Origin: Diadema antillarum
Lineage: Eukaryota
DNA length: 64,000 nucleotides
Assembly (NCBI RefSeq): GCF_040938485.1
Contig: NW_027272349.1
Coordinates: 620,001 to 684,000 of the forward strand
Direction: 5' to 3'
The notes under the pieces were generated by a model. The model was not told the DNA's origin. It did not search any database and worked only from the letters and a program-made list of their open reading frames with translations. The translations under genes were made by a program, and so were the position numbers. Below are positions 55,555-62,829 of this stretch, in pieces (positions within the stretch are counted from its first letter, which is position 1; the number at the start of each line of letters is the position of its first letter).

Positions 55555-57627
55555 TTAATGAGTGCATTTACATTTGAGTAGTAATACATGATGCACCATG
55601 CCATACCCCAGGGTACCATCGTATCCTGGGTTACAGTGTTGTGTAATGTCATCTTGTTTTCATAAGATGTACAATTTCTACACTGCCATCATGGCTGCCA
55701 AAATCCCTATGCAAGTTCAGCCATGTTATTCCTTTTTTTTTTAAAACTGTATAAATCAAATACAAAAAAGTGATGATACTTTTTAATAATTTTTTTCTTG
55801 AAGCGTGTCATTACAATTTTGAACCGAAATTCAGAATGAGACCATTCCAGACCAAGAGCTTGTCCCATTATTACAATACTTTTGTTATGTCTTCTGTGGA
55901 CGGGTAATGCATAGTGTGGTGCTGGTGTCTGTGTGTGACACTAAGGTCATCTGTGTAGTGTGTGATGAGTGTTCATGTTATAATACTTTTGCAAGAAAGT
56001 TTTTTTTTCCACAAAGCACTAACAATTACTGTCACTTAATTAATGGTAACCATGCATATGGTGCTTTAAAAAAATCTACAAAATGGCATATTTCTCTTGA
56101 AAGAAGAAAATTAATAGGGACCATTTTTCAAACACTGTAATGTGTAGACACTGATTTAGTTGCATCAAGGAGGTTTAAGAGAATTAAGTCACAACTGTCT
56201 CATTTCCTTTGCTAGATGTTCGATGCTGCCAGTCAAAAATATTTGAAGCATGTACCAAACTGGATCTGCCACACAGATAGGAAGACAATTGACTCGTGTC
56301 TCACTGCATAATCACCAGCCACTTTCAATGGAAGATATGTCTTTGTGATGGTAATTACTTTTCACCATCTCTACTTATAAAAGATAGGTGATATATGGTG
56401 GTAAAAGACACGGGGATGTGCGAATAGAAATTGGGCAGAAAATGGTCAAATAAAAATGAAAATTACTCAACTGGGCGTGCCTGGGCACTAATCTGGTATA
56501 TCTATCAATAAAGAATTTTGCTTGAAGATTATTCCATATCAATTTTATTTGGGGGAGTTAAATGGAAAAGTGATAAAATTGGCTTTCCAGTATGATACAG
56601 TTTTCAACACTTTCACACGATACAGCTCTGATTTACACTTTTGCACAAATTTCTGGACTGGATTGACTTTTGCCGTACATGCATTATCATGAAGTGAAAT
56701 TTCATTTCGTTTAATGAATAAACACGCAAAATATAGTCGACATTATGTTTACATTAGAAATGGATCTTCAGATTGCTCAACTAGACGGCGGCATCGAACA
56801 TCGATCATCAAAGGCACAAATGCGCATCTGTGGAATTCTTTTGTACATCAATAGAAAACTGACAACTGTTTGAATAATTACAGCCAGTTGGAACTCCAGC
56901 TATCAAACCTCCTTGGTTGCATAGAGTTTGCCGTGGGAAGAAACCTTTCTTATTCATGTGTCGTATGTATGTACTGGTATATGTGTATATATGTCAGTCC
57001 TTTCAGTGCCTGTCTTTCAGAGAGACCAAGACAGAGACAGAGAATGGGGGTACTGTCTCATGAAGTAACCCAATTTTTACCATGTGAAAGAGGAAAAAAG
57101 AGTTGGCACTTTGAATATATTCTTCACCTTTGTAGACAAAGAAGAGAGAGAGAGAGAGAGGGATCAGGGAGAGGGGGAGAGAGGGAGAGAGAGAAATCCA
57201 TTCTAGTCTTCAATATTATTTTTGTTTACTATGCCAAAGAGCACTTCCATATTTGAGCAATTGGCTCTGCATTTGTTGGCCGAGACCCATAGAAGCACTG
57301 TGTTAAAACAAAATTAGGCTTCGGTGTGGGAGATATGCATTTGATTTACAGTCCACTTTCCATTTCAGACATAATGGGCATCATTCTCCATCTATTGATT
57401 TGTAATTAATGAAAACTGTCCAACCGAACCATTGTGATCTTTGCATTTCTACGTTTTCGTAAGAAACCAGGAATTACAGATTTCGCAATTCACAATTTTT
57501 AAGATATCAATAGCAGAGCTACCAAGTCTCACGCATTCTGCGCGAGACTCGAGCATTTAGGGGCCATCTCACGAATGGCACCCATTTTTCTCAAGCATCG
57601 GGCGAAGTCTGCAACTTGGGCCTATAA

Positions 57628-60105
57628 TCTTCTTCTTCTTCTTCTGTATATTCTGCCTCCTTCAATCCTGAAGATTCTTGCAGATTTACATGCGTGTGTG
57701 CGTATCATAAGGGCACCCGAGTGTGCAGTACCTGGATGCAAGGTGCATTATTTACATGGTGCAAGTAAAAACCTGTTGCTCGGTTTACTCCACATCTTCC
57801 GTCAGGCGATGACGGAAGACCTCCACAGACGGTGCCAGGATGACCTCTTGGGGCAGGCTGTTCCACTGCCGTACTGTGCGAGGAAAGAAGGACTGTTTGT
57901 GTTGTTCTGTCCTGGAGATGGGGACCAGATAGCCATATGGATGAACTGTCCTTGTTTGTCTTGTGATGGGGTGGATGGGGTGGTGGTCCATGTTGATGTC
58001 TACCAGTGAGTTGTGCATCTTGTACAGCATGGTCAGCCTGGGGGGCGTTTCATCAACGAGTTCGTCGGAGTTTTCACCGACAAATTTGCTAGCAGCCAAT
58101 CAGACGCAAGAATTTCATTAGCTTTTGATAGTTGTCAGTGTAAATCCTTGCGTCTGATCGGCTGATAGCAAATTCGTCGGTGAAAACCTCCGACGAACTC
58201 GTTGATGAAACGCCCCCCTGGAGGCTTCTCTTCTTTTCTGAAGTGAAGGCCAGCCAAGTTGTTCGAGCATTTCTGACACGCTGGAGGTATTATGATACCG
58301 ATTTAGCACATATCGTGCAGCGCGTCTCTGGATCATTTCCAGCTGTTGAATGCATCCAGCTGTGTAAGGATCCCAAACTGAACATCCATGTTCAACAAGA
58401 GGACGCACAAGTGCCTGGTACGCTGTCGTCTTGAGTTGGGTTGAGTGGATGCGTAGATTACGTCGGAGGAAAGCCAGGGTGTTATTTGCCTTGTGGCAGA
58501 TGTTCGAGATGTGTTGGTTCCACTTGAGGTTGGTTTCAATTGTGATGCCCAAGTATTTGGCAGATGTGACAGTGTCCAGGACTATGCCATTCAGAGTGTA
58601 TTGATGATGATGTCTAGTCCTCTTTCTGGTGACTGTTATTGCGTGGCATTTACGGGGATTGAGTTCCATTTGCCAGTCACTTGACCAGTTACGGTACTGA
58701 GTTTATCCAGGTCTTCTTGTAGGAGCCTGGCATCTTCATCTGACTGGATGGTCATATACATGATGGTATCATCTGCAAATAGCCGAACTGACGTGGACAT
58801 TTCTGTGGGCAGGTCATTGATATAGAAGAGGAAGAGACAGGGTCCAAGGACAGATCCTTGTGGGACTCCAGATTCAACTTCCACTTCAGATGAGGTAGTT
58901 CCATCTAAGACGACTCGCTGTCTTCTGTTTGTGAGGAAGTTTGTTATATCCATCTGATGTTATGGCCTCTTACTCCGTAGTACTGCAACTTGTGGAGTAG
59001 TCTTTTGTGTCCAACTTTGTCGAAGGCCCTGCTGAAGTCTGTGATGATGATGTCTGTTTGCTTGTTCTCCTCCATGTTGTTTATCAGGTCACTGATGAAA
59101 CTGATGAGCTGGAGTTCGCAAGACTTCTTTGCCCTGAAGCCATGTTGGAGTGGGTAGAGGATGTTGTTGTTGTTTGCATGGCTCATGATGTTGCTTACGA
59201 TGATATGCTCCATCATTTTGCAGGTAGGCCTAATGCATGTAAGTGATATTGGCCGGTAGTTTTCTGGGTCTGTTTTGTCTCCTTTCTTGTGCACAGGAGC
59301 CACGTTAGCAAGACGCCAGTCCTCAGGTACATCTCCTGACTGATATGACAGCTTGAAGATAGTGCACAGTGCTGGGGCTATGGTCTTGGACATCTTCTTG
59401 AGAACTAAGGCTTGAATTCCATCAGGTCCAGGGGCCTTCCTGGTGTTGAGCCTTCCCAGCATCTTTTCTATGCCTCCTGTAGTGATGTTAATATCAGGCA
59501 TGGTGTTGAAGGGTGATACATCAGGAAGAAGGTTTGGGGGTAGGTCAGCTTCAGCGGTGAAAGCCTTCCTGAACTGATCATTGAGTACTTCAGCTTTGGC
59601 TTTTGGAGCAGTCACGTTCTGATCATCTGTCTTCAATAGGGGAATTCCACTACAGTCAGATCTGTTGTGTTTTATGAATCTCCAAAACTCTTTCATGCCA
59701 TCATATTGGTTGGAGTCATCATCAGGTGTGAAGATTGATTCTAGGTGTCTCCAATATGCCCTTCTTGTTTCAGCTTGGATGAGGTTTTTCAATCTACGAA
59801 TCTCCTCCTCTGTCGCCACTGGGATGGGTTCGTGTCTTTTTCTGTGATGGTTGACTTTCTTGTGTAGCCTGTCTCTCTTCTTCATGAGTTGCCTAATCTT
59901 CCCATTTATCCAAGGCAGGTTTTGTTTTGATCGCAGCATCTTATGAGGAATGAATTTGTCAGTTCCCAACTCAATGCCAGTTCTGAAGAGATGCCACAAT
60001 TCATTCACTGATGTGGTAGCTGCTCTAGATATAATATCTGAGGCTACTTGTTCCATGTGTGCTTCAAAACTGTCCCAGTCTGCCTTGCTGTAGAGAGCAT
60101 AGCTC
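57628..60105 (-). mobile_element. 5'-truncated non-LTR retrotransposon (CR1/L2/Jockey-group LINE), inactivated
   Basis: RT-region ORF pieces 58944-60107, 58636-58953, 58118-58669 and 57785-58099 contain KAPGPDGI, NYRPISLT, QHGFR, DFSRAFDKV, PQGSVLGP, LFADD, KYLG and SFFPRTVRQWNSLP. 3' stem-loop CTTCA-ATCC-TGAAG (57660-57673) and (GAA)n tail (57628-57645). No endonuclease domain; two frameshifts and a MITE insertion. Confidence 0.95.
58041..58217. mobile_element. PIF/Harbinger-like MITE inserted in the LINE
   Basis: TIR GGGGGCGTTTCATCAACGAG...CTCGTTGATGAAACGCCCCC with perfect CTG TSD (58038-58040 and 58218-58220); removing it restores RREASRLTMLYK. Confidence 0.9.
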
Positions 60106-60575
60106 AAAAGATCAAAGTTATAGTTGCAAATGAAGGTATACTTCCCTTTTGTCTTTCAAAATAAGTAAAAAATAGTCACTTAAGTATGCACCTGATCGCA
60201 CCAAAGAGCTAAAAATTGAAAAAGCTCCCTACCGTGGGAGGCCACAGGGGGAAAAAAACCCTCCCACACCCTCGCTCGCGCGCACATTAGCATGCCGAGA
60301 TGCCGAGTCATGAAAATCTCACTCATAAAATCTTTTTGAACTTGGCATCCCTGCAATAGGTCTAGAGATAATAATGACTAGAGGCTGAGAGCTTACGGCG
60401 CTTTCTCAAGGACTATTAAACATCAACGGTTGAATGGCGAACACGTGCATTATGTTTACAACCGAAACATAACTGAGGAGTTTCCCTTGCACGCGCGTGC
60501 AGTATGGCCTATTTGTACTGCATATGGGACGGAAGGCAGCGTACTGCACTGTGTACGTGCACGCACGCGCGTACA

Positions 60576-60662: not shown

Positions 60663-60755
60663 ATGGCCACCACTCGGATTTCGACACAGTTACCACCGAA
60701 TATAGATGTAACTAAGGCCCCACTCGCATATGGAGACAGAGCTCTTCCCAAACTG
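60663..60755 (+). CDS. RSPH14: Radial spoke head 14 homolog (RTDR1), exon 1
   Basis: AAACATGGCC start; MATTRISTQLPPNIDVTKAPLAYGDRALPKL followed by a perfect GTAAGT donor; matches the recalled human N-terminus ending [22 protein letters not shown]; below the ORF-track length cutoff. Confidence 0.88.
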
Positions 60756-61516: not shown

Positions 61517-61523
61517 TCAAGTA

Positions 61524-62453
61524 CAGTGGAAACTCGATATAACGAGATGGTCGGGACCAAGTCATTTTCCTCGTTATAGCCGATATCTCGTTATATCAGT
61601 AGGCATAAAAGAAGGCATAAAATAAAGACATTAATTTGCACATGTGGGACTACCCATCATATTTCAATCAATACTGATAACTTGATATTGTGTGTGAGGG
61701 AATTACTCACCTTTATGGGTAAGAAGATGTTTTTCGCCAAGGAAATCCAATATCAAGAATGTGTTTCTTATTAATTGTAGATGTTTGAATTTGTAAATTT
61801 ATATAGCTTGCGATTGTATCAAGATCGTCTGTGGATTGTTATGTGGTTATCGTTTGGGTGTGTGTTGTGTGGAAAGCTTGAATATGGTCTGCACAATGCT
61901 GTGTGTGTATGTGACACATTCTGTATGTACATTATGACTGCGTGTGTGTGTGAAGACGGGGAATTCCCTAAGTAGAAGGCCAATCACAGCATCAGATTGC
62001 CTCACACCTGCTAAACGTCATGATGATGTCATGTATACATATGGCCGTCCCATCACATTTTCTGCATGTATCAGTGTGCGTGCACACACACACTTCACAC
62101 GTACAACATGCAGTGCTAGCTGGAGTGCACTGAAGAAAATGATTATGTGTATACAAGACAGTTTTTGGCGCATCAAGCTTTACAATCTCGGAAGATGATA
62201 GCACAGGCGAAGTAAAGCTTTACCGAAGGCATTTTGCTTTACCTCGCTATAGCAGGTTTGATTTACTATGTTTTTCTTTGTTTGGAAGTCACAAAATTTA
62301 TCTCGTTATAGCAGTTATTTCGTTATAGCCGATCTCGCTATAAGAGTAGCATTTTACATAGACTTGTGTGGAAGGAAATTTGGGACCGAGAAAATTTCCT
62401 CGTTATAACCGATATCTCGTTATAGCAGTGTTCGTTATACCGAGTTTCCCCTG
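61524..62453. mobile_element. Tc1/mariner-like non-autonomous element (930 bp)
   Basis: TA|CAGTGGAAACTCGATATAACGA ... TCGTTATACCGAGTTTCCCCTG|TA; repeated CTCGTTATA subterminal motifs. Confidence 0.85.
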
Positions 62454-62829
62454 TACTTGTCTAGCCTAAGAACAGTTGGATCTAATTCTAACATCAATAT
62501 GATTGTAGGCCTACATTTGCTATGACTCACTGCACCTGTACTATTCTGCAAAGCTGGCCGCCTAATTGAGTAACTGTCGACCACAGTAGACACCTACTAT
62601 CACCGTAAAATACTCGTTATCGTGTTAGCTGCTTATTCATCTGTGCTTCCTTGGTGGTCGATGCAACTCAATTCAATTTGTGCCATCATTGTCAGTGCCA
62701 AAATATAGCCTCTAAATAGAATTTCACAAAATTTTATTTTTTGAAAAAGGTGCACATTTCCAAGACTTGTTACTAAACATATATTAATGATGAAGGGTGA
62801 AATTATTCCCCATGCCTTCTGAAAGAAGC

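What the first reader, a model, noticed from the sequence alone, without database searches (positions are those of the whole stretch)
58690..59232. The dead LINE appears to record three DNA-transposon excision footprints at TA sites
Seen in sequence: comparing the RT frame with its family pattern, all three small indels I could locate turn a TA into TA-x-TA. (a) TACGGTA at 58690-58696 adds 5 bp and frameshifts; removing it restores DLDKL-S-N-W-SSDWQMELNP. (b) TATA at 58945-58948 adds 2 bp and frameshifts; removing it restores RWITNFL. (c) TAGGCCTA at 59225-59232 adds 6 bp in frame, turning the usual ISLTCIxCK into ISLTCI-RP-TCK. Established: Tc1/mariner elements duplicate TA and leave TA + terminal bases + TA on excision (TACAGTA/TACTGTA for Sleeping Beauty, TACATGTA for Tc1). 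TACGGTA is exactly the footprint expected from CCG...CGG-ended elements, and one sits at 49634-50993. Inference: three events in about 550 bp would mean frequent insert-and-excise mutagenesis, and TAGGCCTA would point to a GG...CC-ended, TA-targeting family that I do not see as an intact element in this window.
Basis: partly seen in the sequence, partly recalled or inferred. Interest (0 to 1): 0.75.

Follow-up and report, generated by a model that had tools for sequence, protein, structure and literature searches.

The report
Transposon excision scars in dead LINE
Three tiny insertions that break one young, dead LINE copy are scars left at TA sites by cut-and-paste transposons that landed and left again; the mechanism is textbook, but three scars in 543 bases is far more than expected for a copy this young.

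Summary
All eight other copies of this LINE family lack them.

They are the only indels in 1.9 kb against the closest copies. The window copy has just 3 private substitutions.

The excision-scar reading is supported for (a) and (c):
- A family of about 440 TA-flanked elements ends CCG...CGG. One copy lies 8 kb away, and it predicts TAC(C/G)GTA.
- TAGGCCTA is about 14-20 times over-represented in this window, in unrelated contexts.
- An independent private TAGGGCCTA insertion exists in another repeat family.
- In that family, TA sites take about half of the non-tandem insertions. Most of those inserts are palindromic.
- The genome encodes many intact Tc1-type transposases.

Site (b) could equally be slippage. 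No GG...CC donor element was found.

Scars are common genome-wide, but at only about 0.1% of TA sites in young repeats, so this LINE is a local cluster of unexplained cause.

The scan has noted the same class of scars elsewhere in this genome (s1-215131, s1-215094). The mechanism is known, so interest is moderate to low.

The parts
57622..60097 (-). 5'-truncated dead copy of an endonuclease plus reverse-transcriptase LINE family. Its 3' end carries a (CTT)n run on the + strand at about 57630-57647. The copy sits inside a very high-copy repeat.
   Evidence: Extent comes from BLAST against paralogs L002-L007. RVT_1 is found in the frame pieces. The intact relative L004 has Exo_endo_phos and RVT_1. 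Read contigs of other copies of the host repeat join 57628 to 60095.
58690..58696 (.). Scar (a): TACGGTA. The ancestral TA gained 5 bp, which shifts the RT frame.
   Evidence: Absent from all 8 other copies. It matches the scar predicted for CCG...CGG ends.
58945..58948 (.). Scar or slippage (b): TATA. The ancestral TA gained 2 bp, which shifts the frame.
   Evidence: Absent from all 8 other copies. It classifies as a tandem duplication, so its origin is ambiguous.
59225..59232 (.). Scar (c): TAGGCCTA. The ancestral TA gained 6 bp in frame, adding Arg-Pro.
   Evidence: Absent from the six other copies that reach this site (L008 and L009 end before it). The word is 14-20 times over-represented in the window.
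58041..58217 (.). A 177-bp MITE private to this LINE copy. Its terminal inverted repeat begins GGGGGCGTTTCATCAACGAG and it is flanked by a CTG duplication (58038-58040 and 58218-58220). This is a fourth DNA-transposon hit on the same copy.
   Evidence: Paralogs lack it. Read contigs skip 58036-58217. The inverted-repeat scan gives the duplication.
49634..50993 (+). A 1,360-bp non-autonomous element that begins CCGTAAAGTTCCGTGTATAAGACGCAC and ends with its reverse complement (...CGG). TA flanks lie at 49632-49633 and 50994-50995. It is the candidate donor family for scar (a).
   Evidence: The genome holds 440 forward and 435 reverse matches to TA plus the terminal repeat.
2244..2950 (.). A second cluster of the same scar words: TAGGCCCTA at 2244, TACGGTA at 2667, TAGGGCCTA at 2681, TAGGCCCTA at 2700 and TAGGCCTA at 2943.

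Best explanation
Sites (a) and (c), and possibly (b), are excision scars of TA-targeting cut-and-paste transposons of the Tc1/mariner type.

How it works: an element inserts at a TA and duplicates it. When it later excises, the transposase cuts a few bases inside the element's 5' ends. Each flank therefore keeps its TA plus a 2-3-nt overhang of element sequence. End joining then seals the break as TA + x + TA, where x is palindromic because the two element ends are inverted repeats.

- Scar (a), TA-CGG-TA, is what results when the two 3-nt overhangs of a CCG...CGG-ended element pair in full register (C:G, a central mismatch, G:C). Such a family exists, is young, and has a copy 8 kb away.
- Scar (c), TA-GGCC-TA, is the 2+2 form from a family ending GG(G)...(C)CC. 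Its 3+2 forms, TAGGGCCTA and TAGGCCCTA, also occur in this genome.
- Scar (b), TATA, is either the bare duplicated target or ordinary slippage.

Shown: the insertions are derived and private. The donor family for (a) exists and targets TA. The scar words are over-represented. TA-plus-palindrome insertions are a distinct class in an unrelated repeat family. Intact Tc1-type transposase frames exist in the genome.

Inferred: that these particular elements sat at these three sites, and why three events fall within 543 bp of so young a copy. The cause could be an insertion hotspot just upstream of a gene start, local re-insertion of hopping elements, or a recent burst.
For: - Private, derived insertions at TA are the only indels against the closest copies, and they break an otherwise intact family ORF.
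- CCG...CGG family: 28 of 28 complete copies are TA-flanked, identity runs from 92-99%, and there are about 440 copies.
- In a 935-bp repeat family, about 430 copies were screened over a 180-nt interval and 40 more copies over 387 nt. Non-tandem insertions with 2-bp terminal identity fall on TA in 13 of 25 cases, against 9% expected (P about 5e-8).
- Of those 13 TA events, 8 have a palindromic or odd-palindromic x: GGGCC, GAATTC, CCAGG, CCTGG, CAGTG, CACTG, CACAGTG and CTAG. None of the 12 non-TA events does.
- The same words are the most over-represented TA...TA words in the 64-kb window:
  - TACASTGTA 8 vs 0.64
  - TACATGTA 11 vs 1.6
  - TAGGCCTA 6 vs 0.3-0.4
  - TAGGSCCTA 4 vs 0.17
  - TACCWGGTA 4 vs 0.33
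- The genome has many uninterrupted Tc1-type transposase frames. L141 is a complete element with a 347-aa DDE_3 + HTH_Tnp_Tc3_2 transposase and 74-nt inverted repeats.
- Literature: Tc1/mariner scars retain the TA duplication plus 2-4 bp of element end (PMC7913693; PMC4561436).
Against: - No read-level confirmation. Contigs of four public runs show only the un-inserted form at the three sites.
- No other private TAC(C/G)GTA insertion turned up among about 70 insertion-bearing copies of the 935-bp family or 30 copies of the CCG family.
- Outside the CCG element, TACSGTA is not clearly over-represented in the window: 4 sites against about 2.2 expected.
- No GG...CC-ended element was found in about 330 kb of held sequence.
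- No transposase could be tied to the CCG family.
- Three events in a copy with only 3 private substitutions is far above the age-matched rate (expected about 0.09 or less; P about 1e-4). Independent random hits alone therefore do not explain the cluster.
Confidence: 0.8

Rival explanations
1. The insertions are ordinary replication slippage or end-joining filler, and landing on TA is chance.
For: Site (b), TATA, is a plain tandem duplication. That is the commonest class among private insertions elsewhere: 11 of 25 insertions of 2 bp or more. Site (a) can also be read as an imperfect 5-bp duplication (GTTAC/GGTAC).
Against: Sites (a) and (c) are not tandem copies of their flanks. Both are TA-x-TA with palindromic x. 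In control data that form is rare outside TA (0 of 12) and common at TA (8 of 13). TAGGCCTA recurs 6 times in unrelated contexts in this window against about 0.3 expected.
Confidence: 0.08
2. Scar (c) comes from a PIF/Harbinger-type element and not from a Tc1/mariner-type one. Such elements have ends GG(G/C)CC and a 3-bp TWA target.
For: Harbinger terminal repeats have the consensus GG(G/C)CC and target TAA/TTA (PMC4423477, Table 1). The ancestral site of (c) is TAA and that of the L077 scar is TTA. A MITE with a G-rich end and a 3-bp duplication sits in the same LINE.
Against: Only 5 of 14 independent TAGGCCTA sites have a T before or an A after the TA, which is no more than chance. Every case parses perfectly as TA + x + TA, whereas a TWA model needs one base lost each time. 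Harbinger-type elements mostly excise precisely (PMC4561436).
Confidence: 0.07
3. The three insertions are assembly or polishing errors in a repeated region.
For: In the best-holding run (X1) the only contigs covering the three sites lack the insertions. The locus is a multi-copy LINE.
Against: Logan contigs drop minority variants, and the un-inserted paralogs outnumber this copy. Two of the copy's three private substitutions (58505, 58785) are seen in X1 contigs at about single-copy depth. Errors would not produce palindromic TA-x-TA words matching a transposon family's ends. The same words occur as private insertions on many other contigs.
Confidence: 0.05

Closest known systems
Tc1 and Sleeping Beauty excision scars (TACATGTA; TACAGTA/TACTGTA)
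   Same: The TA target is duplicated and 2-4 element-end bases are kept between the two TAs. The palindromic form and the either/or central base follow from pairing of the two overhangs. The same words, TACATGTA and TAC(A/T)GTA, are themselves over-represented here.
   Different: The end bases differ: C(C/G)G and GGCC instead of CAG and CATG. They come from families that, as far as I could check, are uncharacterised. 3+2 forms such as TACAGTGTA and TAGGGCCTA are common here, whereas the paper read here gives 2-4 bp as the usual range for Tc1/mariner (PMC7913693).
Stowaway/mariner scars inferred by comparing genomes in grasses (PMC4423477, PMC5023962, PMC1925063)
   Same: Excisions are recognised after the fact from sequence comparison, and excision repair is treated as a notable source of small mutations.
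   Different: Here the comparison is between paralogous repeat copies within one animal genome instead of between orthologous loci of two species. The case is a cluster of three events in one young LINE copy.
Local hopping of Tc1/mariner elements (own knowledge, not tested here)
   Same: It would give several scars close together and a copy of the donor family nearby (49634-50993, 8 kb away).
   Different: At least two end types are involved (CSG and GGCC), so one hopping element cannot account for all three scars.

Membership tests
Tc1/mariner excision scar | The event sits at a TA that becomes two TAs | tested here: met
   The other copies aligned at each site have a single TA (eight at sites a and b, six at c); the window has TA-x-TA.
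Tc1/mariner excision scar | The bases between the TAs match the terminal bases of a TA-targeting inverted-repeat element in the same genome | tested here: met
   Met for (a): CCG...CGG family, 28 of 28 copies TA-flanked, about 440 copies. Not met for (c): no GG...CC element was found in about 330 kb, only recurrent scar words.
Tc1/mariner excision scar | A filled allele (element present) or an empty TA allele exists at the same locus in other individuals or haplotypes | tested here: inconclusive
   The assembly holds no second haplotype of this locus. Read contigs are dominated by the paralogs.
Tc1/mariner superfamily (donor element at 49634-50993) | TA target duplication and terminal inverted repeats | tested here: met
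   A perfect 27-bp inverted repeat with TA on both sides in every complete copy examined.
Tc1/mariner superfamily (donor element at 49634-50993) | An autonomous relative with the same ends encoding a DDE/D transposase | tested here: inconclusive
   The 1.36-kb copies and a 1.7-kb variant (L139) carry no transposase ORF.
PIF/Harbinger scar (considered for site c) | Target is TWA (TAA or TTA) | tested here: not met
   Only 5 of 14 independent TAGGCCTA sites are in a TWA context.

The most novel reading that the evidence does not exclude
The scars are not scattered at random. They pile up in short stretches that act as landing-and-leaving hotspots for several unrelated TA-targeting families. Examples are this promoter-proximal LINE and the cluster at 2244-2943. 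If so, excision repair would be a leading, locally concentrated source of 5-9-bp insertions in this genome, and it hits newly arrived sequence tens of times faster than the average TA site.
Probability: 0.3. Interest if true: 0.5.

Novelty: new member of a known kind. Interest (0 to 1): 0.35.

Why it matters
The finding shows that paralog comparison can read out past insert-and-excise events base by base. In this genome such scars form a recognisable vocabulary, TA + palindrome + TA, that accounts for roughly half of the non-tandem small insertions in a young repeat family.

This matters for indel mutation spectra, for repeat annotation (frameshifts in 'dead' elements need not be slow decay), and for inferring the end sequences and cutting geometry of transposon families that are no longer seen intact. 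The mechanism itself is textbook, and the same class of scars has already been noted elsewhere in this genome by the scan.

Tried and rejected
- **Public reads.** Only Logan contigs were on offer. They show the paralog form and cannot confirm or refute the window's allele.
- **Haplotig pairs.** I switched to genome-wide pattern searches in a 935-bp repeat family.
- **Wasted searches.** Two pattern searches were lost to my own typing error, a dropped T. They were repeated correctly.
- **Single TA site.** Site 62181 gave 0 scars in 497 copies, which is uninformative alone. The interval search was far more productive.
- **Autonomous partner of the CCG family.** L139, a 1.7-kb variant, and the CAGTA-ended element around L042's copy have no transposase.
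- **GG...CC-ended element.** None was found in the held sequence with either a TA or a 3-bp duplication.
- **Harbinger reading of (c).** Considered after PMC4423477 Table 1 and rejected on target context.
- **21-bp insertion in L023/L025.** It ends ...TACGG|TA and could be a remnant of a CCGTA-type element, but it does not parse cleanly.
- **L023/L025 boundary.** Homology ends exactly at stacked scar words, but the upstream sequences are unrelated and too complex to interpret.
- **Maximal-order Markov expectation.** It is unsuitable for these words because their sub-words are dominated by the words themselves. I used first-order Markov and shuffle expectations instead.

Full report
**What is there.**
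Window 57622-60097 holds, on the minus strand, a 5'-truncated copy of a LINE that encodes an endonuclease and a reverse transcriptase. A search of the window's own genome found eight other copies covering the region of the finding:
- L002, L003 and L004 at 98.7-98.9% identity;
- L005 and L006 at 93%;
- L007 to L009 at 77-83%.

L003/L004 and L005/L006 are near-identical pairs that continue into their flanks, so each pair is probably two haplotype copies of one locus.

In the alignment none of the other copies that reach each site (eight at sites a and b, six at c) has the 5 bases at 58690-58696, the 2 bases at 58945-58948 or the 6 bases at 59225-59232. Against L002-L004 those 13 bases are the only gaps across 58217-60097.

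L004 carries an uninterrupted ORF of at least 959 aa with Exo_endo_phos and RVT_1 domains.

**How young the copy is.**
I compared columns where the window, L002, L003, L004 and L006 are all present. The window copy has only 3 private substitutions in about 1,830 columns. It also has the three insertions and a private 177-bp MITE at 58041-58217, flanked by a CTG duplication. Transposon-related changes (four) thus outnumber point changes (three).

**Donor for (a).**
The element at 49634-50993 has perfect 27-bp terminal inverted repeats. They begin CCGTAAAG and end CTTTACGG, with TA on each side. The genome holds 440 forward and 435 reverse matches to TA plus this repeat, and none to the reversed control. 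The 40 best copies are 92-99% identical, and all 28 complete copies I inspected are flanked by TA.

Mariner and Sleeping Beauty are known to cut 3 nt inside the element. With that geometry the two overhangs pair C:G, mismatch, G:C and give TACCGTA or TACGGTA. Site (a) is TACGGTA.

I could not find a transposase-bearing relative. Membership of this family in Tc1/mariner therefore rests on the TA duplication and the inverted repeats alone.

**Is TA + palindrome + TA a real class of mutation here?**
I could not fetch haplotype pairs in bulk, so I used whole-genome pattern searches on an unrelated 935-bp repeat family (window 61520-62456).

At one TA site, 497 copies were unmodified and none had an insertion. 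Over a 180-nt interval with 20 TA sites, 397 copies had the normal spacing and 31 had a net gain of 2-10 bp.

I fetched those 31 copies and aligned them. They include these private insertions:
- TA-GGGCC-TA
- TA-GAATTC-TA
- TA-TACAG-TA
- TA-CCAGG-TA
- TA-CCTGG-TA
- TA-TCAC-TA
- TA-GCTC-TA

A second interval of 387 nt gave 240 copies with net gains, of which I fetched 40 with +5 or more. It added TA-CAGTG-TA, TA-CACTG-TA, TA-CACAGTG-TA, TA-CAGTA-TA and TA-CTAG-TA.

Among non-tandem insertions that repeat their flanking dinucleotide, 13 of 25 are at TA, although TA is only 9% of dinucleotides there (P about 5e-8). Eight of the 13 have a palindromic or odd-palindromic insert; none of the 12 at other dinucleotides does.

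Pairs such as CAGTG/CACTG and CCAGG/CCTGG differ only in the central base. That is what is expected when 3 bases come from one end and 2 from the other, or when a central mismatch is repaired either way.

**The same vocabulary in the window.**
Setting aside TA microsatellite words, the most over-represented TA...TA words in the 64-kb window are these (first-order Markov expectation):

| Word | Observed | Expected |
|---|---|---|
| TACASTGTA | 8 | 0.64 |
| TACATGTA | 11 | 1.6 |
| TAGGCCTA | 6 | 0.43 |
| TAGGSCCTA | 4 | 0.17 |
| TACCWGGTA | 4 | 0.33 |
| TACWGTA | 20 | 8.3 |

Dinucleotide shuffles give 0.31 for TAGGCCTA, and none of 100 shuffles reaches 6.

The test here is my own and agrees with it.

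Site (c) is therefore one instance of one of the commonest scar words in this genome. L077 shows a closely related word, TAGGGCCTA, arising as a private insertion.

**Which family made (c)?**
No GG...CC element turned up in about 330 kb of held sequence. Because Harbinger elements end GG(G/C)CC and target TWA (PMC4423477), I checked the contexts. Only 5 of 14 independent TAGGCCTA sites have a T before or an A after the TA.

**Can the genome do this?**
A search for the DDE_3 transposase domain found 150 scored matches, many in open frames of 352-392 aa without stops. L141 is a complete element with 74-nt inverted repeats and a 347-aa transposase carrying DDE_3 and HTH_Tnp_Tc3_2. L140 has an intact 342-aa transposase.

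**Rate and clustering.**
In the 935-bp family about 8 scars fall on about 8,600 TA sites, roughly 0.09%. The LINE has 92 TA sites, so about 0.09 scars are expected even without allowing for its youth. That gives P(3 or more) of about 1e-4 and P(2 or more) of about 3.5e-3.

Across the whole window, which is mostly older sequence, scar words sit at about 1% of TA sites and are unevenly spread. There is a second tight group at 2244-2943: TACGGTA at 2667, TAGGGCCTA at 2681, TAGGCCCTA at 2700 and 2244, and TAGGCCTA at 2943.

So 'frequent insert-and-excise mutagenesis' is true of the genome as a whole, but this LINE is a local excess. At least two end types are involved, so a single hopping element cannot explain it.

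A regional hotspot is my preferred guess. It fits the extra MITE in the same copy and the position about 570 bp upstream of an apparent first exon at 60663. That guess is inference and was not tested.

**What remains weak.**
- Site (b) is indistinguishable from slippage.
- Read contigs from four public runs show only the un-inserted paralog form at the three sites. Two of the copy's three private substitutions are seen at about single-copy depth. The insertions therefore rest on the assembly alone.
- No other private TA-CSG-TA insertion was seen in my samples.

**Comparison with known systems.**
The mechanism is the textbook Tc1/mariner scar (PMC7913693, PMC4561436). Recognising such scars by sequence comparison has precedent in grasses (PMC4423477, PMC5023962, PMC1925063). 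What is specific here is the two end types, the clean paralog-based polarisation, and the cluster in one young copy. Earlier notes of this scan (s1-215131, s1-215094, s1-224637) describe the same class of scars elsewhere in this genome, which they call a sea urchin. I did not verify the organism.

**Limits observed.**

Noticed in passing
window 58041-58217: A 177-bp MITE private to this LINE copy. Its terminal repeat begins GGGGGCGTTTCATCAACGAG and it has a CTG duplication. Summed contig depth over it is about 1e5, against about 13 for a single-copy flank contig, so the family has thousands of copies. The 3-bp duplication suggests a different superfamily from the TA-targeting elements.
   Followed up: partly
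window 57500-57628 and 60095-60400: The LINE sits inside a very high-copy repeat (summed contig depth 6e4-9e4). Contigs from other copies of that repeat join 57628 directly to 60095.
   Followed up: partly
window 50102-50108 and 50582-50588 (and the same positions in most copies of the family among L038-L066): The CCG...CGG element carries two internal copies of its own end-plus-target word, (T)TTACGGTA. These may be internal transposase-binding repeats or ancient scars inherited by the family.
   Followed up: no
window 2676-2712: TTATCA-TAGGGCCTA-CTCGTGTGTG-TAGGCCCTA-TGATAA is a 37-bp near-palindrome. It is either two GG(S)CC scars 10 bp apart or a 24-bp remnant of the missing GGG...CCC-ended element flanked by TA. 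TACGGTA lies 7 bp upstream.
   Followed up: partly
L049, L060, L063, L065/L066 around locus positions 1802-1809 or 2527-2536: At least four independent small insertions hit the same palindromic spot (CAGCTGTAACAGC) of the CCG...CGG family. This is a recurrent indel hotspot that is not of the TA-x-TA type.
   Followed up: no
L004:906-3785 (minus strand): A copy of the LINE family with an uninterrupted ORF of at least 959 aa (endonuclease plus reverse transcriptase), so the family may still be active.
   Followed up: partly
genome-wide; L140, L141: Dozens of Tc1-type transposase frames share identical domain scores and 352-aa open frames, which suggests a very young family. L141 has 74-nt inverted repeats, and internal repeat copies end CAGCTGTCC next to TA.
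   Followed up: partly
L005/L006, L020/L021, L026/L027, L028/L029, L017/L019, L023/L025, L065/L066: The assembly holds many locus pairs that are collinear through their flanks at 99.1-99.95% identity, presumably both haplotypes. The window itself has no such partner.
   Followed up: partly
L023:1-40, L025:1-30, L142, L143: Homology between two haplotype copies stops exactly at stacked scar words: TACGGTA-GGCCC-TA in one and TACCGGTA-GGCCC-TA in the other. The upstream sequences are unrelated.
   Followed up: partly
window 62199, 62264, 61883, 61924 (TA sites of the 935-bp repeat): Several independent scars from different end types fall on the same few TA sites of the repeat family, while site 62181 has none in 497 copies. 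TA sites therefore differ strongly in how often they are hit.
   Followed up: partly
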